Notes under the pieces: generated by a model
Databases searched by the model: none
What the model was told of the DNA's origin: nothing
The model's input: the letters and a program-made list of their open reading frames with translations, nothing else
Translations under genes and position numbers: made by a program
Source of the DNA: Lytechinus pictus
Lineage: Eukaryota
Direction: 5' to 3'
NCBI RefSeq assembly: GCF_037042905.1
Contig: NC_087245.1
Location: 39,742,001-39,806,000 of the forward strand
Length of the DNA: 64,000 bases
In this document: positions 2,929-50,850 of the stretch, one piece after another
Layout: every line of letters begins with the position of its first letter
How positions within the stretch are numbered: the first letter of the stretch is position 1

Positions 2929-3973
2929 CAGAGTGAGTCAGAAAAAATGTCCCACTTTTGTAAAGTTGAATTGTTTAAAATATGAATATTTAATCATTAG
3001 TTTCATGATATGTCTTGATAGAGGTATCCTCCAAGTACATTCAGGTACCATTTTCATTTGATCCCGTGCACGCATGACTGAAATCGGACAATCTTTAGAA
3101 GACTGTCAGATCTCACTTGCGCCAGGTTACTGGGTGATGAATAAAACAGTGCTTTAGACAAAGACAGACAGACTGGCATGCTCACACACACACACACACA
3201 CGAACACACACAACACACATGGTAATAACTGGTTCATAATTTTCTCTTTTCTGATTAAGCATTGATTTTTAGCAAGATCGCTGAATGTTTAAGTGGCAAT
3301 TTCCGACAATCTTTCCCCTTAAAACACATTCACTACCACCATCATGTCATCATCATCATCCTCATTGTCATCCTCTTGATCTTGATCTTGATCATCATCA
3401 TCATCAAGTGCACATAAATCCAATATGCTGGTTATGTCCTTTGTTGGTTAACAATGAAAATTTACAATGGATGTCTGTGCTTTTGTTGCACTTGCCTATA
3501 AAAGGGCTTGCCTCATTTGGCGGCAGTCACTTGAGCCTCTTTTTACAGTAGCAAAAATTCCCTTTTAATTGTTTGTGTTTTTATTCACCGACNNNNNNNN
3601 NNNNNNNNNNNNNNNNNNNNNNNNNNNNNNNNNNNNNNNNNNNNNNNNNNNNNNNNNNNNNNNNNNNNNNNNNNNNNNNNNNNNNNNNNNNNNNNNNNNN
3701 NNNNNNNNNNNNNNNNNNNNNNNNNNNNNNNNNNNNNCTTGGTTCAAAAGAGTGTTTTATTCCCCACCCTGTAACTTGGCGCAAGTGAGATCTGACAGTC
3801 TTCTAAAGATTCTCCGCTGTTCAGTCATGCGTGCAGGGGATCAAATGAAAAAGGTACCTGAATGTACTGGGAGGATACCTCTATGAAGACATAACATGAA
3901 ACTAATGATTAAATATTTATATTTTAAACAATTCAACTTTACAAAAGTGGGACATTTTTTCTGACTCACTCTG
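2929..3973. mobile_element. Tc1/mariner-type non-autonomous element with ~230-bp TIRs (spans a gap)
   Basis: TA|CAGAGTGAGTCAGAAAAAATGTCCCACTTTTG ... CAAAAGTGGGACATTTTTTCTGACTCACTCTG|TA; TA target duplication. Confidence 0.85.
3593..3737. other. assembly gap (N run)
   Basis: Run of N. Confidence 1.
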
Positions 3974-23252: not shown

Positions 23253-26200
23253 GTTGGTCCTACCTTGGGACTCTTGGTCGCACGGAATGGGACACCATTC
23301 CTGGTAGCTACTGCAACGGTACTCATCAGTCTCCCATCGATATCATCACCAATATCGCCGTCCCTACTGACCTTGGTACCTTCGTACTGGATGATTACTC
23401 AGCTACTAACCCAAACTTGGATATGGACAACAACGGGCATGGAAGTAAGGAATTAAATGCATTTACTGCACTTATTGCTGTTGTATTTTTTCTTAATTTG
23501 GTTTTTAACGGCGCTCTCATTCAAAGAAAAAATGCGTGGACTGATTTTGACGGATGGGAACTTGTATATGAAATTACTTTTTGTTTGTATGTTTATTTCC
23601 GTATATCAAATAACAAATACAAAATACATATAACATGAAATGATAAAGGTCAAGGTTGCAATACTGAAGAGTAAGAAATGGTAAGGATAACGTAAAACAT
23701 ACGGCTGGCCGTCATATTCAGCTGCAATATTATATTGCTGCTGGCCTTTCATGGAGCCAGTTAACTTGAATAATAGCAATGATTACCATAATGTAAATGA
23801 TGTTGACCATTAAAATAATTATTATAAACAATTCCTATAATTAAATCGTAATCAAAAGCATTACATTTAAAATGGAAATGGAAATATAAATTTTTGTTTT
23901 AGGTTTATTCGTTCCTTTGGTCCGAAGCTAGTGGTCATCTACATGAATGATATGGCAAACCAAAGATACCTCTAACTACCGTTTACCACAGGGCTCTGTT
24001 TGCGGGCCCACCTTACTTTTGGTTTACCTGATTAGTTTTGGACACATCCTACGAATCTACAATGTTCATTATCACAAAATCATGCGCCAATGATATCCAA
24101 AGTTATTACTCTTTTCAAACGAAACCAGGCTAACGAAAGATATAAATTCATCCACCCTCCCTTGTGGCTTAACCGTCATTCTTGGAAACTGATCGCTCCA
24201 AATCTAAGCTCCTTTAATTTGGTTCAAAGACTCAATTTGGTTAAGCCTATGAATATGTCTCTTTTCTGATTGTACGCTGAATGCGGCCTACGCATGATGC
24301 GCAACCTACGGTGATTGTTTTTTGTAGAATGACAATGTCTCGTCAAATTGACAAGCATTAATTCTGTATTTATGTAAAGGTACCAACTCCGCAACATTTC
24401 ATTCATAAGGAAATGTTCAAAAATCTTCATTTGTTACCTATCATGTAGTAACGGTCAGATTGCACGATGAGCTTCAACATTTATACAATCTTTCTGGAGG
24501 AGGCCTCCCTACTACTTACACTGCTACCCAGTTCCATTTCCATTGGGGATCTGTCAACACTCAAGGCTCTGAACATAATGTTGATGGTACAGCATACCCT
24601 GCTGAGGTGAGCGTAATAATGTGTGTGGCCAATCCCAGGCCTTAATGGGTGTGGTCACTCCAGGCCATAATCCTGGGTGTGGCCACTCCAGGCTGCTATG
24701 TGTGTGGTCATCGAAGGCAGAAATGGGTGTATCCATCCCCTGGGGAGTGTTTCATCAACATTTTTATCCGACAAGTTGTCAGTTCTGACATCTTTCCTTG
24801 ATTCTGATTGGCTGAGAGGCACTGTTACTATGGTAACTGTCGGATAAAACAGGACTTGTCGGATAAAACGTCTGACAAGTCCTTTCATGAAACGCTCCCC
24901 AGGCCACTAATTGGTGCGGCCATCCAAGATCATAATGGCCACCTCCCCCATCCCATCATGGGTGTGACTACATGGGCCACATTGGATGGGATCCACGCAT
25001 ATTATGGCCAAGGAAAATTGTAGAATTTCTCTCACTCTGTTCCTTTCTACCGAGGTTTTTTTTTGTCTTTGTCAAGGATTAACATGTGTGAATCTTTTCT
25101 TTGAATCAACAATTACGGAAAACATATATATATTTCTGACATGGGAGTTTAATAGAAAATATATTTTGAGCGATAATGATGTTTTATGCGGTATTATCTG
25201 GAAATAATCCCATGATGAGGGGGGGGGGCTACTAAAGCAACAAAATATATATCTTGGCTTGTTTCGTTGATAAGTGTCTAGATTGGCCTATAGCTACCTA
25301 TCGTAATTGCTTCTAAGCCAATATTCTCATTCATTTAGTTACACATGGTTCACTACGACAAGTCCAGATACAGTGATGTCGTGGCCGCTTTGACGAGCTT
25401 GGAATGGAACGCCGTCGCCGCCCTGGGTGCGTTCATTGAGGTGAGATGGTTTTTTTTTCTGCCGTTTCCTTCTCCTATATTCATCTCATCCTCCTCCTCC
25501 TCCTCGTTCTCCTTTTCTTCCACCTCCCTCCAGTCCTTCCCGTTCTGTTATCCTACTGCTATCACTTGAAGCTCGCTCTGTGATAGCCGGTCTGATTTCC
25601 CAAGTTATTTTTTCCTTCACCATCGATAATGTATGACTAGATTTGCAAATATCCTGTCACTTTTGATTTACACTGAATCTTGATAATATCACTGTGTTTG
25701 TTCTTATTTGGTTGTGAGAAATAATGAATACAGCAGCTTAAAAATTCGTGATCATAAAATAACATAATCCTCGCATCATTAGGAGTAATCATATCTCTTT
25801 GATTTCTCTTTTTCCAGATTGGAGAGGACAATAATCCCGCCTTCGATAATTTCATAGCTTACTTCGACCAGATCTCTAACTACTCATCAGGCGACACATC
25901 TCTTGGTATTGGAAACCTTCCATCGTTCCCGATCCGTTCCGTCTTTCCCTTCGACCTCTCCAGGTTCTACCGATACAACGGCTCTTTGACAATACCAAAC
26001 TGCTACGAATCCGTCATCTGGACTGTTTTTGAAGATACCATCAAAATTTCTCAAGAACAGGTTAGTATAAGAACAGGGACTTGGTGTTTGTCGCGTGGCC
26101 AGATAATTTCATCGAGGGGACGGTGGTAACTCGTAGGCGTAAAGCAGTATTGCGAGATGAGAGGTTTTTTTTGTGAGACTTTTTTTCNNNNNNNNNNNNN

Positions 26201-27795
26201 NNNNNNNNNNNNNNNNNNNNNNNNNNNNNNNNNNNNNNNNNNNNNNNNNNNNNNNNNNNNNNNNNNNNNNNNNNNNNNNNNNNNNNNNNNNNNNNNNNNN
26301 NNNNNNNNNNNNNNNNNNNNNNNNNNNNNNNNNNNNNNNNNNNNNNNNNNNNNNNNNNNNNNNNNNNNNNNNNNNNNNNNNNNNNNNNNNNNNNNNNNNN
26401 NNNNNNNNNNNNNNNNNNNNNNNNNNNNNNNNNNNNNNNNNNNNNNNNNNNNNAAGCCCACATATCCACCAGGCATGACGCACATGGCGCTATGTAAAAT
26501 CATAAAAATTAATGACATAAATACAAATTGTCTTACATTTTATTATTAATGGCAAAAAGAAGCTGCTGAAAACTGCTTATCTAATAAAAGAGAGCCAATG
26601 GAGTAAATTAGAAAGTCAAAAGGGGCCTAAGCTTTCGAACCTATTTTGCCTCCGACAAAGATTCTGCTAGGATCTAAAGCTTAGGCCCCTTTTGACTTTC
26701 TATTTTATTATTAAGTACAAACTGACAAACTTAATGTTACGGAGCAAAAAAAACTGGAGGAAACTTTAGACAGATATGACTGTTTGATTTACAAAAACAT
26801 TACTAAGAATGTTTGCTTAATATTATATAAACATCTATATAAGATCTAAGCCAAAAATGAAAAAATACAACATATTGATAATGATGATTCAGTTAATACA
26901 AGTGGATAATTAAATTATAAGGTGAATAGATGTGTTTTAAGTAATTGATATAATTGAAAGTATAGATCTGCAAATTTAAACTTAAAGATAGGGCTAGGAT
27001 TGCAGGAATGGGAAATGAATCAAGGTTGAGCTGGGTGTGACACAACACTACAACAAACATGCAAGCTTATAATATAACGACCGAGCGAGAAAAAAAATCT
27101 TGCTGATTTTACCATAAAACCTACACATAAGTTATTGGAGAATGTGAAAAACTAAATTTCTGTTTCATCAGTGAAATTTAGCATAAGTACTTGAAGCACA
27201 ATTCAGATTGCCCTCTCTATTGCTCTTCTATCTGATGTAGGTTTGATCCACATCGTGTTTTGGCTCGACTTCCACTAAGATTCCTAAGACTAAATTCATG
27301 CTATGTTCGGCACTGTGCTAATTTGGAATGAGTCCAATGCCAATTAGACACCAACAGGTTATCACCGAGCTTGAAAATGTCCATTTTGTCATTCAGTGAA
27401 TACGAAATGACAGAGGTTTCTTTACAGAGGTAGGCCTACTCTAAGCAGTTAGCTGAAGATCACCTTCAACTTTATGTTATTAATAACTGATGATGACTGC
27501 TTCATTTAATGATGGACCGGTTTATATTTCTATCTTTTTTGTCTAGCTTGACAAATTCCGCACCGTATATGGCGACCAGAAGAACGTTAATGGCACTGAC
27601 CTACCTATCGTCGACAACTACCGCCTCACTCACCCTCTGTTTGACCGCACAATCTATTACAGCAGACCGAGCGCTCCAGCCGGCGGCGACACGACACCCA
27701 GTCCAGGAGATGGAGGTGGTGCAGTTACCATCTCACCGATGAGGGCGCTGCTCTTGATAGCTCTTGCCCTTCATATGCTCTTCAGTCGCTTTTAG
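23253..27795 (+). CDS. alpha-carbonic anhydrase, extracellular/probably GPI-anchored (CA4/CA14-like); 5'-partial
   Basis: join(23253-23444, 24449-24606, 25339-25440, 25818-26060, 27547-27795), all GT-AG with compatible phases. Motifs: WSY..W..C.G..QSPIDI, NNGH (His64), QFHFHWG (His94/96), GSEH, ELHMVH (His119), YRYNGSLTIPNCYESVIW, DNYR. Ends in a Pro/Gly spacer and hydrophobic tail RALLLIALALHMLFSRF*. Confidence 0.93.
24742..24900. mobile_element. Harbinger-like MITE in a CA intron (other copies 28922-29068 inverted; fragment ~32836-32875)
   Basis: TIRs GGGGAGTGTTTCAT / ATGAAACGCTCCCC; inserted in a GGGTGTGGCCA-type degenerate minisatellite. Confidence 0.8.
26188..26453. other. assembly gap (N run) in a CA intron
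   Basis: Run of N. Confidence 1.
26609..26702. repeat. perfect 27-bp inverted repeat, possibly a Penelope-like terminal remnant
   Basis: TAGAAAGTCAAAAGGGGCCTAAGCTTT (26609-26635) and its exact reverse complement (26676-26702). The Penelope origin is inferred. Confidence 0.6.
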
Positions 27796-39957: not shown

Positions 39958-41792
39958 CCTTGGTACCATAGCTCGTAAGAGAGATATTGCAGTAATATTT
40001 TTTTAATGATCAGCTCATGCATTCATAAACGTAAACATGGCTGTATTCAAAAATATATTCTATCATGTGGCACACACAAAATAAATAATAAGACATTCTG
40101 GATCAGTATCATAGTGTCAAGAACTGATATTGTTCTTAAGAAAAGGTGAACTATCATTTAAGTTCACCATCCTATACAAGAATGTTGAAGTTCTTATATT
40201 CAATGGTAAATTATTCAAAAGCGTAGTGTCGCCGCTGAGAAATTCTTTGCACCGTCGTTGTCGAAACGTTTTTTGGGGGTTTTAAGGTATATGATAGTCG
40301 CATGCTATGAGCTGATGTGTGAGAAAGATCTTGTAAATATTTTCGCGCCAGCCAGTTTGAAGCACAGATGTTGAAATATGCAGATTTTGATTAACATTAT
40401 AACATGTATAATGTTAGATTACTATATCATATAACTCTGATTAGTTATCATGAAAACTATACGCAAATTTAATATTAGTAATAAAACAACAAGATCACAT
40501 TTGATTGAGCAAATTTTAACATCAATGTATTTATCAATTAATTCGTGTATACTGTAAGTAATGTAAAGATCTGTAATATTTTGAGTCAATCATTAAAGGA
40601 TTAAACTTTGAAATCGTCATTTAGTAAACTGTTGAGGGGATTTGCGCTTATTCCTGTTGTATTCATCGCAGAATGTTTTTTGTGAATTTAATTTAGATTT
40701 TAGATTTAACATGAACATGGCAATATTGACAGGCATATAATGATTAATTACATCTTTGGATGGCACATATTTCATCTGCATTGGGAATAACGTAGACAGA
40801 GGAGGAAAATTCAGTCATGGCCATATTCATCCAAAATAACTTTTCTCTCTGATATTAACAAGGGAATAAGAGATTATAGAGTTGAATAGGCGTGCATCCC
40901 AAACTATTTGAAAAGGTGTTGGTCAAAGTAACCAATTTGAGGGTGAATAGGGGTCCAACCGATAAATATTCTGGTATATCCTTAACCATTCATAACAACT
41001 ATTCTTTAAAAATCATTAACAAGTTACTTAACGTTTTAAACAAGTTGTTAAAAAACAAACGAAAGGTTTTGACCATTTTAGTCGGTCGGACACGCAACAC
41101 ATTGGCTATTTTGACCGATAATATTTGAGAGTGCATACGTTTCATACATTTTATTAAAACAAAACACCCTCCAGAAAAGTAGCACATCTCTTTATTGTCA
41201 CTAAGTTGTCTAATGACATTTAAATACAAAGAAAATTTAAAATCTTCACGATACCTGTTCAAGATCTTTCTTTCCCGTCTGGTTTCACTGTATCTGACAT
41301 AGCACCAAATGTGTTATTAACCCGTATGTGTTGTAATCGGATGCCTGGTGACGCGACATTTCGCCATTTGCTCCGGTCTCAATATCTTAGAAGGGGTTAG
41401 AGATAGGATTGCAATAGAGTTTTATTGGTTCAGAATAATGTCAAGATGTGGATTAAGGTATAGAGTTTTGGAGGTTGGGTTTGGCTAGTTAACTTGCAGA
41501 TTTTCCATCGGAGCAATTGTCACTGGAGCAAATTAGTACCGGTTTTCAGCTATGATGGTTTTATGTATCGTTCCAACGCTATCTAAAAGTTTAAGCACGT
41601 TGTTCAACCTCGTTTCTCACAACTATTGTTTATAAGTTTTAAACCCGTTGATTAAAGCTTGAAAATAAGTTGTTTAAAAAAATGGTTTAACTTGTTGTCA
41701 GAGTAACAGACTTGCTATTTTAAGCAACGTTTTTACAGTATCCGTAAATCTAAAGATGAGAAATAGATCAGTGAGTAGTGCGGTGGTCTAAC

Positions 41793-42874
41793 TGTTGTGA
41801 AAGTTGATTGAAAAATATATGATTTCTCATTTGATATTGATGTGAAATATTGCAGAAACATTATTTTATATATTTCATATTTCCATGATGATATAACATT
41901 TATCACTGGTTATGTTTTATAAAAACCTTTGGTCATGTATATAGCACAGTGCATATATGTCATTATCAATATTGCTTGTGCTAGGCATTTATTGACATAG
42001 CGCCAGCTAGTGTTCTCTCTAGGACAGTGTTTTCCATTGCACCAATCACTGTATGTAAACATGGAAGAACTGACAGGTTTGAGGTGACACAATCATCCAA
42101 GTTCCAGTGAATTCTGGAAACCTGGTTATTGATTTGATACAATAAGGAGGCAAAGAGGTTAGTGTCTCATAGGAAGTCTTTATTTTATGAAATGATAAAT
42201 GTTAAAGATGAAAATAAGTTGAATTATTTTAGGTTCTAAATCCAGCTACTGTGCATGTAGATTACATAACAATTATACATTCACATGTGTGTTATAAGAT
42301 TGTGTAAGCAAGAAATAAGATCAAGTCTATAGCTTATACATTAGATCCTCACATTTGAAGATGACATAGTGATGAATAGGAGATTCATGTATGTTCACTG
42401 AATTTGATATTAGTTTACTGAAAATAAGATAATTCAGGATTTGTTTTGTGGAATTAATGACCAGAAAGGTTACACTATATGTAGGTCAGCAGAAAGTCAA
42501 GATATGGTAGCTTCATATTTAAAACACAAAGATACACCTGAAGTTATTGATAGTATAGTGGTAACTCTAATTGTTGTGTAAATCAATGTGTCAATATACA
42601 CATTTTATTATCAGATTATAAGCACATTTCACAATAATTGTTTAGTTTGTTGCTTGAAGAAAGAGTGAATTATCAGATGATCACACATAAGTGTATACAA
42701 TGTATTTATGATGCCTTTTTGTATGTTTCATTGATACAGTTTTCACGGAGCTTTTGGAGCTATATCAAAGTTTGAAGATGATTAATCGAAATGAGATGAG
42801 TCAAGAATAAAGTCTCGAAGCTCCCGTAGAAGCCTTTGTCTGTGTTTCATTCGTGTACCTTGAATGCTGTCACA
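41793..42874 (+). repeat. 5' LTR
   Basis: TGTTGTGAAAG...TGCTGTCACA; direct repeat at offset 7938; AATAAA at 42806-42811. Confidence 0.97.
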
Positions 42875-43015
42875 GTGAAAACTCTGCCACTCTGAAGAGT
42901 GAAAGGTCTACCCATTCTGAAGAATGAAATCTCTCGCCATGCTGAAGTTTGAATTCTATCGCCTTTAAAGAGTCAGTCTGTCTTCACAATTATAATCAAC
43001 GGAAGTCATCTGAAA

Positions 43016-46000
43016 ATGTCTACTCATCGCGAGGAAAGCTTATCTGAACCTGGAGCAGTCGGAGGTGACAAGCGAATTCGTCAACCTACCAATAAGGGAT
43101 TGCAATGGCAGTTAGAAGTGAAAGAAAAGAAATGGAAAAGCTGCATTACTTCATGGAGAAGATCATCAACGAAATTAAGGGCTCTTCTTACAGATGAAGA
43201 CGCAGAAGTTAATGCCATAAAATCCCATAGAGATGCTCTGCAGGCAATTACGGATGATGCTATAACAGCTCAAGAAGAATTTTCTACAGCTGCAAAGATG
43301 CTTTCTAAAGAGGAAAACAGTGAAGCAAAACTTGATGAGCTAGAGGAAGAACATTCAGTTCTAATGAAACAAACGTACGATAGAGTGAGAGCCGCCCAAG
43401 GAAGTTTGAGATTGTCTACGTCAAGTTCTTCATCGAAACGTAGATGTCAACAATGGCTTGATCAACAGTTACAACCCAACAATACAGATGACGTTCAAAG
43501 TGATAAAGTACGTCAAGAAAACGGGGTTGAAAAGAAAGTCAATGCCGACAAACCAATTCCAAACGAAGATCTCAGACCTAGACAACAACAAACATTTGAG
43601 GAGCCTGCAAATCCTGTACAAGAGCTTCATCAAGACCCAGAATTCCTCACATCATGTCTGATTGACCAGATGCGACTCAATCGACTCCCTATTCCAGAGC
43701 CACCAGTCTTTGATGGAAGCCCCCTACAGTATCCGGCTTGGAAGAGAGCTTATGACATGCTCATTGAAAAGAAAGAAATTTTGCCAGAAGACAAGTTTTA
43801 CTACTTGTTGAAGTACCTAAAGGGCCGTCCCTTTGAGTTAGTTCAGGGATACTCACTCCTTAGTAACGACCATGCTTACACAATCGCAAGACAGGAATTG
43901 GACAAACGTTATGGAGACACGTTTGTCCTGTCCAATGCATTTCGGGACAAGCTAGATGCATGGCCTAAGATAGGTGCAAGGGATTCAGATGGCCTCCGAA
44001 GATATGGTGATTTTCTCCGTCAATGTCTTGCTGCATCTCAGGTTGTACATCATTTGAACCACCTAGACGATGAGAGGGAGAACAGAAAGCTACTGTCGAA
44101 GCTTCCAGACTGGCTCACGTTTAGATGGGGTCGGAAGGTTGTTCAATGGAGAAGAGATACGAACTCATTCCCTCCATTCCCTGTCTTTGTGAACTTTATC
44201 GTAGAAGAAGCAGAGGTAGCAAGTGTATCAGTAATGTCTGTTCAGGAAAAGAAACCATCGTCTAAAGCTAGGACTCTATCTACTGGCGTACAGAAGAAAG
44301 ATGAAGGAAGCAAGAAGAAATTTGCCTGTCTTTTTTGCAAAGGACAGCACCGTCTGGCAGAGTGTACTTCTTTCGCATCGCAGCCTATGGAAGAGAAGAG
44401 AAAATTTGTCCATAAGTGTAATCTGTGCTTCGGATGTCTTAAGCCTGGTCATAGATCGAAGGAATGTCGCTATAAGAGCACTTGTTCGAGGTGTAAGAAA
44501 AGACATCCTACAGCACTTCATGATGATAATTGGAGTAGTAAGCGACAATCTAAAGAAGATGACTCTCTGCATGAGACAGAGGAATCTCATTCGTCCCATG
44601 CATCAAGCAACAAGAGTAGCTCCCATACTTCAAAAACCTCTTCTATTGTTCCAGTATGGTTATCCCATACTTCAACGCCAAAGGAGTTGTTGGTATACGC
44701 AATGCTTGATACCCAATCTGACACGACGTTTATCCTTCGAAGGACGAAGGAAAAAATGGGAGTTACGGGTACAGAGGTCAACCTACTCCTCTCAACAATG
44801 TCCAAGGCTGAGGAAAGAGTTGCAAGCGAGAAGATTAAAGGTCTCAAGGTGAGGGCCTTAAATGGTGAAAAGGAGATTATGTTACCACCATCTTATACCC
44901 GTGATATCATGCCGGCAAATAGAACTCACATTCCCACGCCTGAAGTCGTCGAGAATCTCACCTATCTGGAGTCCATTAAAGATCACCTATCGCCATTGAT
45001 GGATTGTGAGATAGCCTTACTTATAGGCTATGATTGTCCTACTGCACTTGCTCCTCGAGCTGTCATTCCCCCACCGGTACATGGAGGACCTTTCGCAATG
45101 CAGACTGACCTGGGATGGAGTGTCATAGGCATGGTGGATCATGACTGTAAAGAAAATGACCCAATAGGTATAAGCCATCGTACCATGGTGAAGGTCCTTC
45201 CTGAGGAGGTGCAGCTAGACGGTCATCCTACCGAAGTCTTGTTCTCATGCCAATCCACAGTTAGAGAGGAGATAGCACCGCATCAAGTCATCAGGCTCTT
45301 AGAAGCAGATTTTGCTCCTGAAAGAGCACAACGGCCTTACTCTCAGAATGATACCAAGTTTCTGAGACTGATGGAGGAGCAGATTCGCGTCACAGACGAT
45401 GGACACTATGAAACACCCCTTCCTTTCAAGGAAACACATCCTAAGCTGCCGAACAACAGAAATATGGCTTTGAAGAGGTTAGGCAGCTTAAAGAGAAAAT
45501 TTGAAAAGGACTCTGAGTATCACAAGCTTTATACTCAAAAGATTCGATCACTAATAGAGAAGGGTTATGCAGAATATGTTCCAAACTCATCTAGGGAAGC
45601 TGACACATTTTGGTACATCCCTCACCACGGAGTGCAGCAACCCAACAAGCTTCGTGTGGTTTTTGATTGCAGTGCACAGTGCAACGGTGAGGCACTGAAC
45701 CATCATCTGTTAACCGGCCCAGATCTGACAAATAATCTAGTAGGAGTATTATGTAGATTCCGTACTGATTATGTGGCCTTTAGTTGTGACATACAGGAGA
45801 TGTTCTATCAGTTTCAAGTCAGAAGTGATCACCGTGACTATCTTCGATTTTTATGGTGGAAGGACGGAGACTATCGACAACCTGTATGTGATCTGCGTAT
45901 GAGAGTACACCTTTTCGGAGCTTCATCATCGCCAGGCTGTTCAAATTTCTGCCTCAAACAGATAGCAACAGATCATGAACAGCAATTTGGAAAAGACGTA

Positions 46001-48706
46001 AAAGACTTTGTGCATCATGACTTTTACGTCGATGATGGTTTGAAGTCGGTCCCTACAGCTGAGAAGGCTACTGACCTGATCGTGAGAACAAGAGAGTTAT
46101 GTGAGAAAGGTGGGATACACTTACACAAATTTATCTCCAACTCTCGAAAGGTGATTGAAGATGTGCCTGAAGCAGAAAGAGCCAAAGATCTAACAACCAA
46201 AGAATTATTCCACAATGACTTACCAATCCAGAAAGCGTTAGGAGTACAGTGGTGTGTGGAATCAGACACATTTCAGTTTCGGATAACATTTGACCCGAAG
46301 CCTTCGACCAGACGTGGAATCTTAGCAACTGTGATGTCGGTGTATGACCCTCTAGGTCTACTAGCTCCAGTTATTCTTCCCGGCAAATTAATTCTTCAAG
46401 AATTATGCAAAGGTGGTGCCGAATGGGATGATCTCCTGAGTGCTGACCTCCAAGCAAGATGGGAGAGATGGAAGAACGACATTGTAAAGGTGGAGAGTCT
46501 CTCAATCAATCGATGTTTCAAGCCTAACAACTTTGGTGCGATCCAGAGGGTGGAACTCCATCATTTCTCAGATGCCAGCAGCATAGGCTATGGTCAATGC
46601 ACCTACTTGAGACTGATAAATGAGAAGGGTGATGTACACTGTGCTCTAGTTATTGGAAAGTCCAGAGTTGCTCCTGTAAAGACACCTACAATTCCAAGAC
46701 TCGAGCTAACTGCAGCCTTGCTCTCAGTCAAAGCAAGCCTGTTTCTTAAAACGGAACTGGGTCTCACAATCGACAAAGAAGTCTTTTGGACGGACAGTAG
46801 AGTTGTGCTCGGTTACGTTAAGAATGAGACAAGACGTTTCCACGTATTCGTTGCTAATAGGGTGAAACAAATCAGAGATGCTTCATCACCATCTCAGTGG
46901 AATTATGTGGAAACCAAAGATAACCCAGCTGACCAGGCATCTAGAGGGATTAGAGTTGACCAACAAGAGATGACGAAGTGGCTGATTGGCCCAGGGTTCT
47001 TGTGGAAGGATGACGTCGAAGATGAGATGAATAAAGATGAAAGCACAATTCTTCCGAACGACCCTGAGGTGAAGCGCTCCCATGCTACAATCAAGCATGC
47101 AGAGAAATTTGATCTTGAGAGACTCAGACGATTCTCTACCTGGCATCAAGTCAAGAGGGCAGTAGCCAACTGTCTTCGTCTCAAGCTTTACCTCCAGAGA
47201 TGCCGCCAGGAAAAGCAAAAGGATTCACATAAAGCCAAGATCGCCATTCAACCTCTGTCCACCGAACTACTTGTCAATGCTGAGACAGAAATCATACGAC
47301 ATATTCAGAAAGATGCTTTCGAAGACGAGCTACGGACATTGGGTGGCATAGAAGGAGCTACTCGGAAGGGCAGACGTCTCGTCAAGTCTAAGAGCCGTCT
47401 ACATCAGTTGGATCCCTTCATAGACACTGAAGGAATTCTTAGAGTTGGAGGTAGACTGACAAGGGTTGAGGGACCATTCGAGCTTAAGCATCCTGCCATT
47501 CTCCCACAGTGTCATATTACAGAGCTCCTAGTTGCCCATTGCCATGCAGAAATAGCTCACCAGGGGAGAGGTATGACAATCAACCACGTCCGAGCTAAGG
47601 GATACTGGATCCTTGGTTGCAGTCACTTTGTGTCCAAGTTTATCTCCAGATGTGTGACCTGCCGTAAACTCCGTCAACCAGTCCAAAGTCAGAAGATGGC
47701 TGATCTTCCCAAAGATCGGCTTACACCTAGTCCTCCATTTACTTACTGTGGTGTAGATTGTTTTGGCCCGTGGACTATTAAAGAAGGCAGAAAAGAGTTG
47801 AAAAGGTATGGCCTCATCTTTACTTGCATGGCATCAAGAGCAATTCACATAGAAACGCTAAATTCAATGACTACTGATGCCTTCATAAATGGATTACGAC
47901 GTTTCGTTTCTATACGTGGTCCTATCAGGCAGTTGAGATCAGACAGAGGGACAAACTTTACTGGTGCAGCGACTGAACTCTCAAAAGCATGGAAAGAAGT
48001 GGACCAAACGAAAGTGGCATCTATCCTGCTTACAGAGGGCTGTGACTACTTTGATTTCAAGTTCAATTTCCCAGCCTCGAGTCATATGGGAGGGGCATGG
48101 GAAAGACAGATTCGTTCAGTACGCACCATACTCGATGCACTACTGCATCGAAATGGTCACCAACTTGATGACGACTCGCTTCGTACCTTGCTCTGTGAAG
48201 CAGCTGCTATCGTCAACAGTCGTCCTTTGGCTGTGGAATTCCTCAATGAGCCCAACCACCCAGAACCACTAACTCCAAACCATCTACTGACCCAAAAGAC
48301 GAAGGTTATTCTGCCACCACCTGGGAGGTTTCTTCGTGAAGATGTTTACCTGAAGAAGCGCTGGAGGAGGGTTCAGCACCTTTGTAATGAGTTTTGGATC
48401 CGATGGAAAAAAGAGTTCTTGAACCAACTGCAATCACGAAAGAAATGGACTCATACTCGTCGTAATATGAAAGTTGGTGATGTCGTAATCATCAAAGATG
48501 ATCAGTTACCTCGAAACTTATGGCCACTTGGGAGAATCGTCGAAAGTTATGAATCTGAAGACAATCGCGTTCGCAAAGTGAAGGTAGCAGTAGGCGATCG
48601 AAAACTAGCAGCATCAGGAAAGCGAACTACTTCAGTGAATTACTTATATCGCCCTATTCACAAACTAGTACTGTTACTTTCATATGAAGACCAGGTAGAT
48701 TCCTAG
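43016..48706 (+). CDS. BEL/Pao Gag-Pol polyprotein (1896 aa): Gag, protease, RT, RNase H, integrase
   Basis: Three Zn knuckles (CLFCKGQHRLAEC, CFGCLKPGHRSKEC, CSRCKKRHPTALH); protease LDTQSDTTFI; RT YIPHH..LRVVFD..FYVDD; RNase H FSDAS..PRLEL..WTDS..NPAD; integrase HHCC plus GVDCFGP, SDRGTNF and GAWER. Confidence 0.97.
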   Translation: MSTHREESLSEPGAVGGDKRIRQPTNKGLQWQLEVKEKKWKSCITSWRRSSTKLRALLTDEDAEVNAIKSHRDALQAITDDAITAQEEFSTAAKMLSKEENSEAKLDELEEEHSVLMKQTYDRVRAAQGSLRLSTSSSSSKRRCQQWLDQQLQPNNTDDVQSDKVRQENGVEKKVNADKPIPNEDLRPRQQQTFEEPANPVQELHQDPEFLTSCLIDQMRLNRLPIPEPPVFDGSPLQYPAWKRAYDMLIEKKEILPEDKFYYLLKYLKGRPFELVQGYSLLSNDHAYTIARQELDKRYGDTFVLSNAFRDKLDAWPKIGARDSDGLRRYGDFLRQCLAASQVVHHLNHLDDERENRKLLSKLPDWLTFRWGRKVVQWRRDTNSFPPFPVFVNFIVEEAEVASVSVMSVQEKKPSSKARTLSTGVQKKDEGSKKKFACLFCKGQHRLAECTSFASQPMEEKRKFVHKCNLCFGCLKPGHRSKECRYKSTCSRCKKRHPTALHDDNWSSKRQSKEDDSLHETEESHSSHASSNKSSSHTSKTSSIVPVWLSHTSTPKELLVYAMLDTQSDTTFILRRTKEKMGVTGTEVNLLLSTMSKAEERVASEKIKGLKVRALNGEKEIMLPPSYTRDIMPANRTHIPTPEVVENLTYLESIKDHLSPLMDCEIALLIGYDCPTALAPRAVIPPPVHGGPFAMQTDLGWSVIGMVDHDCKENDPIGISHRTMVKVLPEEVQLDGHPTEVLFSCQSTVREEIAPHQVIRLLEADFAPERAQRPYSQNDTKFLRLMEEQIRVTDDGHYETPLPFKETHPKLPNNRNMALKRLGSLKRKFEKDSEYHKLYTQKIRSLIEKGYAEYVPNSSREADTFWYIPHHGVQQPNKLRVVFDCSAQCNGEALNHHLLTGPDLTNNLVGVLCRFRTDYVAFSCDIQEMFYQFQVRSDHRDYLRFLWWKDGDYRQPVCDLRMRVHLFGASSSPGCSNFCLKQIATDHEQQFGKDVKDFVHHDFYVDDGLKSVPTAEKATDLIVRTRELCEKGGIHLHKFISNSRKVIEDVPEAERAKDLTTKELFHNDLPIQKALGVQWCVESDTFQFRITFDPKPSTRRGILATVMSVYDPLGLLAPVILPGKLILQELCKGGAEWDDLLSADLQARWERWKNDIVKVESLSINRCFKPNNFGAIQRVELHHFSDASSIGYGQCTYLRLINEKGDVHCALVIGKSRVAPVKTPTIPRLELTAALLSVKASLFLKTELGLTIDKEVFWTDSRVVLGYVKNETRRFHVFVANRVKQIRDASSPSQWNYVETKDNPADQASRGIRVDQQEMTKWLIGPGFLWKDDVEDEMNKDESTILPNDPEVKRSHATIKHAEKFDLERLRRFSTWHQVKRAVANCLRLKLYLQRCRQEKQKDSHKAKIAIQPLSTELLVNAETEIIRHIQKDAFEDELRTLGGIEGATRKGRRLVKSKSRLHQLDPFIDTEGILRVGGRLTRVEGPFELKHPAILPQCHITELLVAHCHAEIAHQGRGMTINHVRAKGYWILGCSHFVSKFISRCVTCRKLRQPVQSQKMADLPKDRLTPSPPFTYCGVDCFGPWTIKEGRKELKRYGLIFTCMASRAIHIETLNSMTTDAFINGLRRFVSIRGPIRQLRSDRGTNFTGAATELSKAWKEVDQTKVASILLTEGCDYFDFKFNFPASSHMGGAWERQIRSVRTILDALLHRNGHQLDDDSLRTLLCEAAAIVNSRPLAVEFLNEPNHPEPLTPNHLLTQKTKVILPPPGRFLREDVYLKKRWRRVQHLCNEFWIRWKKEFLNQLQSRKKWTHTRRNMKVGDVVIIKDDQLPRNLWPLGRIVESYESEDNRVRKVKVAVGDRKLAASGKRTTSVNYLYRPIHKLVLLLSYEDQVDS

Positions 48707-49730
48707 CCAAGGAGCCTTGAACGCTTGAATTAGAAAATCGCTGAATTGGGTCTGAACTATAGACTAATATTTGAATGGACCAGACTGAACAGTATTAATT
48801 TGATATGTGTCTGAAACCCAGACTATATGTTTTATCTATTCCACTTACAGGGTCTGAATTTAAAGACTAAGGATACAATTTGAAACAGCAAAAGGTCTGA
48901 ATTTAAAGACTATATATGTTTATTTCACTCAAGAGTCTAAAATCAAGACTGGTATTTCCAAAGTACAGGAATGTATATTGTTGTTTTTTTTTTTGGTAAT
49001 TTTTCAAAGAAATCAAGGTATAGAAAATATTGTAAAATAAAGTATCTATATTGGTATGTTACATATATATTACAATTTGTTATTATCAGGGCAAATATTT
49101 TCACCATTTATGCCATTCAAGTACATGTATCTATGACCTGAAAAACTGTACGTAACTTGAGTTTGAAAGACAGAATTCATATAAACAGTTCATTTTATAA
49201 ATTTTTATCAGACTTTTATCTGATTCCCATTGTCGAGAAATATGGTATCGAACAATGAATTTATGCAAATGAAGCAGAGTATTTGAGTCAAAATTTGTTT
49301 TATTTTAAATTCAAAGGTCTTATCAAATTTGATTAAATTAATCATAGGCCTAGTTGATGCATTTTTGATACGTGGAAAAATGATAAAAACAAATGTCGTT
49401 TTTTATTAAGGTTGATTTATCTACATTAAGTATTTTCTGATATGTGGAGAAAAGATTAAGTATCTATGGGCTACAGCCATGTGTAAGTAAACACAATTGT
49501 GAATGGATGTTTTTCAATTAACAGTAAAATGAAGAGTTCGTTGTTAGTCAATTCGGTAAATTGGTATTTTCTTTGTATGCATTTGTCCAGCAAACATTAT
49601 GGTACTTTTGCAGATTGATGTCGTGTCCAGAAATGTTATGCGTTGGATACGTTAAACGGAAAGTAGCATAAATCTATTCATTTTTCAAGCCCATAGTTGT
49701 TGGGTAAATTTGTGAAATTTAAAGGAGCCA

Positions 49731-50812
49731 TGTTGTGAAAGTTGATTGAAAAATATATGATTTCTCATTTGATATTGATGTGAAATATTGCAGAAACATT
49801 ATTTTATATATTTCATATTTCCATGATGATATAACATTTATCACTGGTTATGTTTTATAAAAACCTTTGGTCATGTATATAGCACAGTGCATATATGTCA
49901 TTATCAATATTGCTTGTGCTAGGCATTTATTGACATAGCGCCAGCTAGTGTTCTCTCTAGGACAGTGTTTTCCATTGCACCAATCACTGTATGTAAACAT
50001 GGAAGAACTGACAGGTTTGAGGTGACACAATCATCCAAGTTCCAGTGAATTCTGGAAACCTGGTTATTGATTTGATACAATAAGGAGGCAAAGAGGTTAG
50101 TGTCTCATAGGAAGTCTTTATTTTATGAAATGATAAATGTTAAAGATGAAAATAAGTTGAATTATTTTAGGTTCTAAATCCAGCTACTGTGCATGTAGAT
50201 TACATAACAATTATACATTCACATGTGTGTTATAAGATTGTGTAAGCAAGAAATAAGATCAAGTCTATAGCTTATACATTAGATCCTCACATTTGAAGAT
50301 GACATAGTGATGAATAGGAGATTCATGTATGTTCACTGAATTTGATATTAGTTTACTGAAAATAAGATAATTCAGGATTTGTTTTGTGGAATTAATGACC
50401 AGAAAGGTTACACTATATGTAGGTCAGCAGAAAGTCAAGATATGGTAGCTTCATATTTAAAACACAAAGATACACCTGAAGTTATTGATAGTATAGTGGT
50501 AACTCTAATTGTTGTGTAAATCAATGTGTCAATATACACATTTTATTATCAGATTATAAGCACATTTCACAATAATTGTTTAGTTTGTTGCTTGAAGAAA
50601 GAGTGAATTATCAGATGATCACACATAAGTGTATACAATGTATTTATGATGCCTTTTTGTATGTTTCATTGATACAGTTTTCACGGAGCTTTTGGAGCTA
50701 TATCAAAGTTTGAAGATGATTAATCGAAATGAGATGAGTCAAGAATAAAGTCTCGAAGCTCCCGTAGAAGCCTTTGTCTGTGTTTCATTCGTGTACCTTG
50801 AATGCTGTCACA
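49731..50812 (+). repeat. 3' LTR
   Basis: Same length as the 5' LTR; no differences seen on inspection. Confidence 0.97.
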
Positions 50813-50850
50813 CTAACCATCCGGCGAACTAATTCAAAATCCAGTCGGTG

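What the first reader, a model, noticed from the sequence alone, without database searches (positions are those of the whole stretch)
42737..42883. BEL/Pao retrotransposon with no tRNA PBS but a Tf1-like self-priming signature
Seen: the 5' LTR ends ...GTCACA (42874) and is followed by GTGAAAACT (42875-42883), not by the TGG expected for priming from a tRNA CCA end. The exact reverse complement, AGTTTTCAC, lies inside the LTR at 42738-42746. It begins at the A of an initiator-like CAGTT, ~70 nt upstream of AATAAA (42806), where the R region should start. Pairing puts the primer 3' end (C42746) on G42875, flush with the LTR end. Just 3' of the putative primer, GGAGCTT (42747-42753) can pair with AAGCTCC (42818-42824) as a second stem. 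Established: Tf1/sushi-group Ty3/gypsy elements self-prime by annealing the first ~11 nt of their RNA to the PBS, followed by RNase H cleavage. Inference: this BEL lineage may have evolved the same tRNA-independent priming; I do not know this to be described for BEL/Pao. A given 9-mer is expected in a 1082-nt LTR roughly 1082/4^9 (~0.4%) of the time, somewhat more for AT-rich DNA.
Basis: partly seen in the sequence, partly recalled or inferred. Interest (0 to 1): 0.85.

Follow-up and report, generated by a model that had tools for sequence, protein, structure and literature searches.

The report
Retrotransposon primed by its own spliced RNA
This young sea-urchin BEL/Pao retrotransposon has no tRNA primer site; the site matches the exon-exon junction made when an intron inside its own long terminal repeat (LTR) is spliced out, a pattern shared and co-varying in relatives from five animal phyla, so a whole clade probably primes its own reverse transcription.

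Summary
The LTR (41793-42874) ends ACA and is followed by GTGAAAACT. The exact complement lies at 42738-42746, and the second stem is real.

In 16 related BEL/Pao elements from echinoderms, fish, bivalves, a coral and a bryozoan, the post-LTR sequence always complements an LTR-internal sequence, with compensatory changes.

The CAG before TTTTCAC is not shown to be an initiator. It has all the features of a 3' splice site. A conserved donor upstream (AAAGAG|GTTAGT, exon end 42157) would join ...AGAG to TTTTCAC. [quoted passage not shown]

Two genomic LTRs lack exactly this intron. One carries the predicted 30-nt junction with no mismatch. So the splice happens in RNA that is reverse-transcribed.

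Best reading: tRNA-independent self-priming by a spliced LTR junction. I found no description of this for BEL/Pao, which ICTV lists as tRNA-primed.

Not shown: the transcription start site, the cleavage, and whether the primer acts in cis or in trans. RNA-seq gave only 7 reads.

Six unchecked first-stage notes on other windows of this genome describe the same signature.

The parts
41788..41792 (.). 5' target-site duplication CTAAC (its partner is at 50813-50817)
   Evidence: An empty-site contig in run X1 joins 41792 directly to the 3' flank.
41793..42874 (+). 5' LTR, 1082 nt, TGT...ACA, identical to the 3' LTR
42141..42157 (+). Conserved end of the putative LTR exon 1 (AATAAGGAGGCAAAGAG). The last 4 nt, AGAG, would form the 5' part of the primer.
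   Evidence: One of only three sequence islands shared with other families. Invariant in 13 family-A LTR copies. Co-varies with PBS positions 8-12 across elements.
42158..42739 (+). Putative LTR intron, 582 nt, GTTAGT...CAG
   Evidence: Donor score and junction complement. The homologous intron is missing exactly in two genomic LTRs: family C at G000:C13:2861305-2861839 and L015, a relative of family A.
42701..42739 (+). 3' splice-site region: TGTATTTATGA (branch-point-like; also readable as a TATA-like box), a T-rich tract, then CAG
   Evidence: Conserved arrangement in all 16 elements
42738..42746 (+). Its AG would be the end of the intron, and TTTTCAC (42740-42746) the first 7 nt of exon 2, i.e. 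the 3' end of the proposed primer.
42747..42824 (+). R hairpin (P2): 42747-42754 pairs with 42817-42824, with AATAAA (42806-42811) inside it
   Evidence: Positions 10-14 pair with the 5 nt just before a YGTAGA-like motif in 10 of the first 15 elements, with 7 different helix sequences
42825..42852 (+). Conserved CGTAGAAGCC followed by a GU-rich stretch; probable poly(A) cleavage region and downstream element (inferred)
   Evidence: the function is inferred
42875..42885 (+). Primer binding site GTGAAAACTCT, flush with the LTR end. It complements the predicted junction AGAG+TTTTCAC.
42876..42963 (+). Leader with 3.6 degenerate 25-nt repeats that resemble the PBS
   Evidence: A similar repeated PBS-like leader occurs in the Ictalurus element L058.
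43016..48706 (+). Intact gag-pol ORF, 1896 aa (BEL/Pao)
49718..49730 (+). Polypurine-tract region TTTAAAGGAGCCA, conserved in the echinoderm relatives
49731..50812 (+). 3' LTR. Its copy of the intron is 50096-50677. This copy must stay unspliced in the template RNA for progeny LTRs to keep the intron (inferred).

Best explanation
The element is a recently active BEL/Pao retrotransposon that does not use a host tRNA as primer.

Its LTR holds an intron (42158-42739). Splicing joins ...GGCAAAGAG to TTTTCACGGAGC.... The junction AGAG|TTTTCAC is the exact complement of the 11 nt that follow the LTR (42875-42885).

Inferred mechanism, by analogy with Tf1:
- The junction anneals to the PBS next to the R hairpin.
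- The RNA is cut after CAC, so that C42746 pairs with G42875.
- The new 3' end primes minus-strand DNA starting at the last base of U5.
- After the cut, the effective repeat for the first strand transfer is exon 2.
- The promoter, exon 1 and the intron are restored from the unspliced 3' LTR copy.
- Plus-strand synthesis re-copies the primer, which keeps the PBS matched to the junction.

Shown: the complementarity, its co-variation at three sites, and the reality of the splice.

Inferred: the priming itself, the cleavage, whether the primer comes from the same RNA's 5' end, and the length of exon 1.
For: (1) Sixteen elements all have an LTR-internal complement of the sequence flush with the LTR end, while the LTRs are otherwise unalignable. 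They are five families in this genome plus Diadema, S. purpuratus, Patiria, a Logan contig, medaka, Carassius, Mytilus, Crassostrea, Oculina and Watersipora. Only three islands are shared: donor, acceptor plus exon-2 start, and LTR end plus PBS.

(2) There are five 9-mer pairs with compensatory changes, including a transversion. On a polyprotein tree of 10 of the elements (plus an outgroup) they need at least 5 independent double changes.

(3) Every element has a GT donor whose exon end extends the complement to 10-14 nt. There are 10 junction types, each matching its own PBS. Shuffling PBSs or exon ends among elements reached the observed total in 0 of 20000 trials. Within this one genome, family D has GAAG/CTTC while A, B, C and F have AGAG/CTCT. 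A shared host RNA cannot explain that.

(4) In Carassius the PBS (GTGAGAATTCAT) equals the junction complement 12/12 but mismatches the unspliced 9-mer.

(5) The predicted 30-nt family-C junction exists once in the genome with 0 mismatches, inside a complete LTR lacking the 468-nt intron. L015 is a second, older intron-less LTR, related to family A.

(6) The host tRNA-Glu(UUC) anticodon arm matches only 8 nt.

(7) Minimum-free-energy folds of the spliced leaders pair the junction with the PBS in 15 of 16 elements.
Against: - There is no direct RNA evidence. Three RNA-seq runs gave 7 reads and no junction read, so the start site, the splice in the 5' LTR and the cleavage are unobserved.
- For four elements (S. 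purpuratus, medaka, Oculina, Watersipora) the donor was chosen partly by its match to the PBS, which is circular. In medaka and Watersipora the match is only 10 nt.
- Both intron-less LTRs are single copies, and all lineages keep the intron. This is unexpected if intron-less elements could self-prime, and it hints that the intron holds something essential, perhaps the promoter.
- Beyond 11 nt the match is usually interrupted.
- TATA boxes about 30 nt before the donor in families B, F and Crassostrea would imply a first exon of only about 4-7 nt, which is unusual.
Confidence: 0.68

Rival explanations
1. One reading: transcription starts at A42738 (CAGTT as initiator, TATTTAT about 30-35 nt upstream). 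The first 9 nt of the unspliced RNA fold back on the PBS and are cut off as primer, exactly as in Tf1. The LTR intron is spliced only in the 3' UTR and is irrelevant to priming.
For: The exact 9-nt complement never extends in genomic DNA on either side in the 15 elements tabulated at that stage. A YA start context and TATA-like motifs occur 26-37 nt upstream in many elements. The singleton status of intron-less LTRs fits a promoter lying inside the intron.
Against: It does not explain why PBS positions 10-14 co-vary with the donor exon end hundreds of nt upstream. It does not explain why the Carassius PBS matches the junction and not the 9-mer. The TATA-like motif, T-rich tract and YAG are all required anyway for the splice that the DNA fossils show.
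Confidence: 0.1
2. Same spliced-junction primer, but supplied from elsewhere. Either the junction formed in the 3' UTR of the genomic RNA (start at A42738) pairs with the PBS, circularising the RNA. Or a short spliced, polyadenylated LTR transcript anneals in trans, as a tRNA would.
For: The intron-less LTR fossils prove splicing only of the 3' LTR copy. AATAAA lies 69 nt after the acceptor, so short LTR transcripts are plausible. Retention of the intron in all lineages fits a promoter inside it.
Against: It needs two RNAs with different splicing states, or the loss of the 3' repeat by the cleavage. There are no data on short LTR RNAs. It is more complex than cis priming.
Confidence: 0.18
3. 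The junction-PBS pairing is real but serves another purpose (packaging, dimerisation, translation control or poly(A) site control), and an unidentified primer starts DNA synthesis.
For: No biochemical evidence for priming exists. Long-range 5' leader pairings with other roles are known in retroviruses (general knowledge).
Against: The duplex ends exactly at the LTR boundary in all 16 elements, which is where the primer's 3' end must sit. No other complement or tRNA match was found.
Confidence: 0.07
4. A host RNA is the primer, for example a 5' half of tRNA-Glu(UUC) ending in the anticodon loop UUUUCAC, as copia uses a tRNA-Met half.
For: UUUUCAC is the anticodon loop of host tRNA-Glu(UUC), and 8 nt match the PBS. 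The variants TTCTCAC and TTCTTAC also look like anticodon loops.
Against: The match stops at 8 nt (PBS GTGAAAACT versus the tRNA complement GTGAAAACC) and does not extend in any family. This model cannot explain the co-varying LTR-internal sites, nor the different PBS extensions among families in one host.
Confidence: 0.02

Closest known systems
Tf1/Tf2 (S. pombe), Tj1 (S. japonicus) and the Tf1/sushi group of Ty3/gypsy elements: self-primed reverse transcription
   Same: No tRNA PBS. The PBS sits next to the 5' LTR and complements a short segment (11 nt in Tf1) of the element's own LTR-derived RNA. A hairpin lies next to the duplex. The primer segment is lost from the 5' end and restored from the 3' copy (PMC4600332, PMC6317226; the Tf1 details are from my own knowledge of Levin 1995-1998).
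   Different: This is a different superfamily (BEL/Pao). The complement is not contiguous in the DNA: it is assembled by splicing an LTR intron. The core motif is nearly invariant over five phyla instead of being family-specific. Cleavage and the 5'-terminal position are untested.
Predicted self-priming in the plant Ty1/copia TAR lineage (Houba, Osr-1) and the Tcn1 chromoviruses
   Same: Self-priming inferred from sequence alone, in a lineage outside Tf1 (PMC6317226).
   Different: No intron is involved there. Those are plant or fungal elements. The present case would add the third LTR superfamily.
Canonical BEL/Pao (Belpaoviridae) replication as described by ICTV
   Same: Gag-pol architecture, LTRs, polypurine tract, 5-bp target-site duplication.
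   Different: ICTV states an 18-nt PBS complementary to host tRNA-Arg or tRNA-Gly, and priming by a host tRNA (PMC8742986). The insect member Achilles has an 18-nt tRNA-Tyr PBS (PMC4580426). This clade has neither.
copia and plant Ty1/copia lineages primed by a tRNA half
   Same: The PBS does not start with TGG, and the primer's 3' end would lie in an anticodon loop-like sequence.
   Different: The host tRNA-Glu(UUC) matches only 8 nt, and the PBS tracks the element's own LTR, not the tRNA.

Membership tests
Self-primed LTR retrotransposons (Tf1-type mechanism) | PBS not complementary to the 3' end of a tRNA | tested here: met
   The PBS starts GTGAAAACT, not TGG. There is no tRNA gene in the window. 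The best host tRNA candidate, the Glu-UUC anticodon arm, matches 8 nt only. Not every host tRNA was compared.
Self-primed LTR retrotransposons (Tf1-type mechanism) | PBS complementary to a segment of the element's own LTR-derived RNA, ending flush with U5 | tested here: met
   9 nt in genomic DNA and 11 nt across the predicted splice junction, flush in all 16 elements.
Self-primed LTR retrotransposons (Tf1-type mechanism) | Complementarity kept by compensatory changes in relatives | tested here: met
   Five 9-mer pairs and 10 junction types. At least 5 independent double changes on the tree. Shuffles reached the observed total in 0 of 20000 trials.
Self-primed LTR retrotransposons (Tf1-type mechanism) | The complementary segment is the very 5' end of the transcript | not testable with these tools
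   Only 7 RNA reads were laid, with no read starts or junctions. A conserved YA 5-7 nt before the donor, and TATA boxes about 30 nt before it in some families, hint that the spliced RNA could begin there.
Self-primed LTR retrotransposons (Tf1-type mechanism) | RNase H-dependent cut of the RNA duplex that releases the primer | not testable with these tools
   Inferred only from the flush geometry and the invariant G after the CAC/TAC/GAC end.
Self-primed LTR retrotransposons (Tf1-type mechanism) | Helix next to the primer-PBS duplex | tested here: met
   The R hairpin starts at the base after the proposed cut. Ten of the first 15 elements have it, with 7 co-varying helix sequences. It is not shown to be equivalent to the Tf1 U5-IR stem.
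Tf1/sushi lineage of Ty3/gypsy | Pol of the Ty3/gypsy chromovirus type | tested here: not met
   Pfam gives Peptidase_A17 (Pao), DUF1759 and DUF5641. The homologues are BEL/Pao polyproteins.
BEL/Pao (Belpaoviridae) | Gag-pol with Pao-type protease, RT and integrase; LTRs | tested here: met
BEL/Pao (Belpaoviridae) | 18-nt PBS complementary to a host tRNA (ICTV profile) | tested here: not met
   Across families only 9-11 nt after the LTR are conserved, and they match the element's own LTR (PMC8742986).
tRNA-half priming (copia type) | PBS complementary over about 12 nt or more to an internal tRNA segment | tested here: not met
   Host tRNA-Glu(UUC) reads ...GGATTCGTGGTTTTCAC. The match to the PBS ends after 8 nt.

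The most novel reading that the evidence does not exclude
A large, ancient clade of BEL/Pao retrotransposons (echinoderms, fish, molluscs, cnidarians, bryozoans) makes its reverse-transcription primer by splicing. An intron inside the LTR must be removed to assemble the sequence that pairs with the PBS, so reverse transcription is coupled to pre-mRNA splicing. The first exon may be only a few nucleotides long.
Probability: 0.55. Interest if true: 0.92.

Novelty: new variant of a known kind. Interest (0 to 1): 0.85.

Why it matters
Self-priming has been shown experimentally for Tf1 and Tf2. By sequence it has been inferred for parts of Ty3/gypsy and Ty1/copia.

BEL/Pao, the third LTR superfamily, is described as tRNA-primed (ICTV), and its replication is called poorly understood. 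If this reading holds, several things follow:
- tRNA-independent priming exists in all three superfamilies and is old and widespread in animals.
- PBS-based annotation tools and tRNA-fragment silencing models would miss this clade.
- A primer that exists only after splicing would be a new link between RNA processing and reverse transcription.
- It also explains why these LTRs carry conserved splice signals.

The three co-varying sites give a simple signature for finding such elements in any genome.

Tried and rejected
- **Start-site and splice mapping by RNA-seq.** Three ribo-depleted 2026 runs gave 7 reads on the LTR and leader, with no read starts and no junctions. This is uninformative, not negative.
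- **Fetching whole copies of about 20 further BEL families of this genome.** I did not try to get those letters another way. Later own-genome work used only hypothesis-specific patterns and coordinate tables.
- **tRNA primer.** ARAGORN found no tRNA in the window. My first tRNA-Glu pattern had the wrong spacing and found nothing. The corrected pattern found about 20 genes, and the match to the PBS stops at 8 nt.
- **Stem 2 against shuffles, element by element.** Not significant for single elements. It became convincing only when anchored to the conserved motif that follows it.
- **Intron-less junction searches for families A, B, D and F.** No hits. A degenerate 18-mer search gave no excess over the reversed control apart from the one exact family-C hit.
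- **Looking for RNA-derived contigs showing the junction.** L057 is a circular contig that keeps its intron. The Ictalurus contigs break about 30 nt into the LTR.
- **The barnacle element L055 (35% identical).** It has neither a TGG PBS nor this signature, so the clade boundary lies between it and the other elements.
- **Literature.** No paper describing self-priming in BEL/Pao turned up in seven full-text searches. The two main BEL/Pao surveys do not mention a PBS at all. The original Tf1 papers are not held in the library.

Full report
**1. The observation**

The window holds a complete LTR retrotransposon at 41793-50812 on the + strand.
- Two 1082-nt LTRs (41793-42874 and 49731-50812) are identical at every base, begin TGT and end ACA, and are flanked by a 5-bp duplication, CTAAC.
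- One uninterrupted ORF of 1896 aa (43016-48706) carries Peptidase_A17 (Pao protease), DUF1759 and DUF5641. The best database relatives are BEL/Pao polyproteins of sea urchins, the closest from Lytechinus pictus at 92%.
- The 9 nt after the LTR, GTGAAAACT (42875-42883), occur once in the window. Their exact reverse complement lies at 42738-42746, and again in the 3' LTR.
- AATAAA is at 42806.

So every stated fact holds.

**2. Is it more than chance?**

- The genome (812 Mb) has few copies of this family. All 13 close LTR copies keep the 9-mer; one degenerate copy has a CpG-type C-to-T change.
- A search with the gag protein found about 20 related BEL families in the genome. For four further families (B, C, D, F; 44-52% gag identity) the fetched loci reach the 5' LTR. 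All have ...ACA|GTGAAAACT after the LTR and CAGTTTTCACGGA 90-302 nt upstream, while the rest of the LTR cannot be aligned.
- Elements fetched from other species show the same arrangement. Diadema, S. purpuratus and the starfish Patiria have the same 9-mer.
- Other hosts have different 9-mers whose partner changed in step. Medaka and the coral Oculina have AGTTCTCAC/GTGAGAACT. Mytilus and Crassostrea have AGTTCTTAC/GTAAGAACT. The bryozoan Watersipora has AGCTTTCAC/GTGAAAGCT. A Logan contig has AGTTTTGAC/GTCAAAACT.
- On a maximum-likelihood tree of the polyproteins of 10 of these elements plus the barnacle outgroup, Mytilus groups with Patiria and Crassostrea with Oculina. The changes therefore arose at least five times independently.

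**3. The host-RNA alternative**

UUUUCAC is the anticodon loop of tRNA-Glu(UUC), which suggested a copia-like tRNA half as primer. The host genes read ...GGATTCGTGGTTTTCAC|CCACG. Their complement agrees with the PBS for 8 nt and then diverges in every family. A host RNA also cannot explain an LTR-internal copy that co-varies. I reject this.

**4. The twist: the 9-mer sits on a 3' splice site**

First-stage notes on other windows of this genome (s1-317469 and s1-317514, unchecked) suggested that a splice junction inside the LTR could make a longer complement. I tested this.
- In all 16 elements the 9-mer is preceded by a conserved (C/T)TTAT motif about 30-36 nt upstream, then a T-rich tract, then YAG. 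That is the anatomy of a 3' splice site.
- Scoring GT donors in the upstream LTR found, in nearly every element, one whose exon end extends the complement. In the window, AAAGAG|GTTAGT (exon end 42157) would join AGAG to TTTTCAC, giving 11 nt complementary to 42875-42885.
- The match is 11-12 nt in family B, 14 nt in family C, and 11 nt in F, Diadema, Mytilus and the Logan contig.
- The donor exon end changes together with PBS positions 8-12. Family D and S. purpuratus have GAAG with CTTC. Patiria has AGGAG with CTCCT. Crassostrea and Oculina have CAAG with CTTG.
- Carassius has ATGAA with TTCAT. There the PBS equals the junction complement 12/12, while it mismatches the unspliced 9-mer.
- In all there are ten junction types, each matching its own PBS. 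Shuffling PBSs, or exon ends, among elements never reached the observed total in 20000 trials.
- Families with different PBS extensions coexist in this one genome, which again excludes a shared host primer.
- Caveat: for S. purpuratus, medaka, Oculina and Watersipora I picked the donor partly by its match. The S. purpuratus donor is, however, the homologue of the conserved GGCAARRAG|GT motif.
- Between family A and the others, the only significant similarities over about 1 kb of LTR are three islands: donor, acceptor plus exon-2 start, and LTR end plus PBS.

**5. Does the splice really happen?**

I could not see it in RNA. Three RNA-seq runs gave 7 reads. But reverse transcription leaves fossils.
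- I predicted the family-C junction (15 nt of exon 1 plus 15 nt of exon 2) and searched the genome. It occurs once, with no mismatch, at G000:C13:2861567-2861596. The chance expectation is about 1e-9.
- BLAST coordinates show a complete family-C LTR there. It runs from the LTR start at 2861305 to the exon-1 end at 2861581, then directly into exon 2 and on to the LTR end at 2861839. It lacks the 468-nt intron and has no PBS after it, so it is a solo or 3' LTR.
- Independently, locus L015 (78% identical to family A) aligns in one piece with the window's LTR once 42158-42739 is left out, straight across the junction. It is a single copy.

So RNA spliced at exactly these sites has been reverse-transcribed at least twice. 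Junction searches for families A, B, D and F found nothing.

**6. Structure**

The base after the proposed cut (G42747) starts a hairpin that spans the rest of R and holds AATAAA.
- In 10 of the first 15 elements, positions 10-14 pair with the 5 nt just before a conserved YGTAGA-like motif, with seven different helix sequences.
- Single-element shuffles were not significant.
- Minimum-free-energy folds of the spliced leaders pair the junction with the PBS in 15 of 16 elements.

**7. Mechanism**

Shown:
- A PBS flush with U5 that complements a spliced LTR junction.
- Three-site co-variation.
- A real LTR intron.

Inferred, by analogy with Tf1 (PMC4600332; details from my own knowledge):
- The junction anneals to the PBS.
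- The RNA is cut after CAC.
- The 3' end primes minus-strand DNA.
- The first strand transfer uses exon 2 as the repeat.
- Extension through the unspliced 3' LTR copy restores the intron, exon 1 and the promoter.
- Plus-strand copying of the primer rewrites the PBS, which explains the co-variation.
- When the 3' copy is spliced, intron-less LTRs result, as in the two fossils.

Open questions:
- The start site is unknown. A conserved YA 5-7 nt before the donor, and TATA boxes about 30 nt before it in families B, F, C and Crassostrea, hint at a first exon of only a few nucleotides. That would put the primer at the very 5' end of the spliced RNA, as in Tf1. Other elements lack such a TATA.
- The intron is kept in all lineages (47-634 nt), and both intron-less LTRs are singletons. 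In that case the junction would form only in the 3' UTR or in short LTR transcripts and act in trans.

I cannot decide between these.

**8. Comparison with what is known**

- Self-priming has been demonstrated for Tf1 and Tf2. From sequence it has been inferred for Tj1, the sushi group, Tcn1 chromoviruses and the plant copia TAR lineage (PMC4600332, PMC6317226).
- For BEL/Pao, the ICTV profile states an 18-nt PBS for tRNA-Arg or tRNA-Gly and priming by a host tRNA, and calls replication poorly understood (PMC8742986). An insect member has a tRNA-Tyr PBS (PMC4580426).
- The two main BEL/Pao surveys do not mention a PBS. Seven full-text searches found no BEL/Pao self-priming and no LTR-intron primer. 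The library lacks most subscription journals, so prior description cannot be excluded.
- The element works like Tf1 but is not a member of that lineage.

**9. Verdict**

- This is a new variant of a known kind, with strong comparative support and no biochemical support.
- Six first-stage notes on other windows of this genome describe the same signature. They are unchecked and do not count as independent evidence.

Noticed in passing
window 41760-41792 joined to the flank after 50817: Run X1 (Logan contigs, behaves like DNA) holds a 101-nt contig joining the 5' flank directly to the 3' flank with a single CTAAC. This is the empty site, so the insertion is polymorphic and recent, in line with its identical LTRs.
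   Followed up: partly
window 42876-42963; L058:30-200: The leader just after the PBS consists of degenerate tandem copies of a PBS-like unit (25-nt period, 3.6 copies). The Ictalurus element also has several CAGTGAAAAACGTGGCC-like repeats after its PBS. These may be traces of primer copying or re-initiation.
   Followed up: no
L026, L027, L028, L031, L035, L036 (family C LTRs): The distance from the 9-mer to the PBS varies from 112 to 302 nt among copies of one family, because of tandem duplications inside R. This recalls the tandem R copies described for Pao itself (from memory).
   Followed up: no
G000:C37:389170-390511 and G000:C16:25742736-25744078: Some family-C LTRs have an extra stretch of about 596 nt, starting 6-9 nt into the intron just after the donor. 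It is either a nested insertion or a longer intron variant.
   Followed up: no
G000:C16:2592775-2598837: A cluster of 11 identical tRNA-Glu(UUC) genes spaced about 385 nt apart. Further copies lie on C18 and other contigs.
   Followed up: no
L057 (Logan contig SRR26948359_64391): A circularly assembled BEL element with only a 47-nt LTR intron, and an extra called ORF between the PBS and gag that runs across the contig join.
   Followed up: no
L051 (Mytilus) and L054 (Crassostrea): The two bivalve elements share TTCTTAC/GTAAGAA although they fall in different clades of the polyprotein tree. This could be convergence, recombination of LTRs, or a host effect.
   Followed up: partly
L055 (Amphibalanus, 35% identical polyprotein): This more distant BEL element has neither a TGG-type PBS nor the junction signature after its LTR. 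Its primer is unidentified.
   Followed up: no
window 49718-49730; L046-L048, L051: The polypurine-tract region TTTAAAGGAGCCA (TTTGGGGAGCCA in others) just before the 3' LTR is conserved across echinoderm and mussel elements.
   Followed up: no
window 3593-3737 and 26188-26453: Two runs of N (masked sequence or gaps). Left untouched.
   Followed up: no
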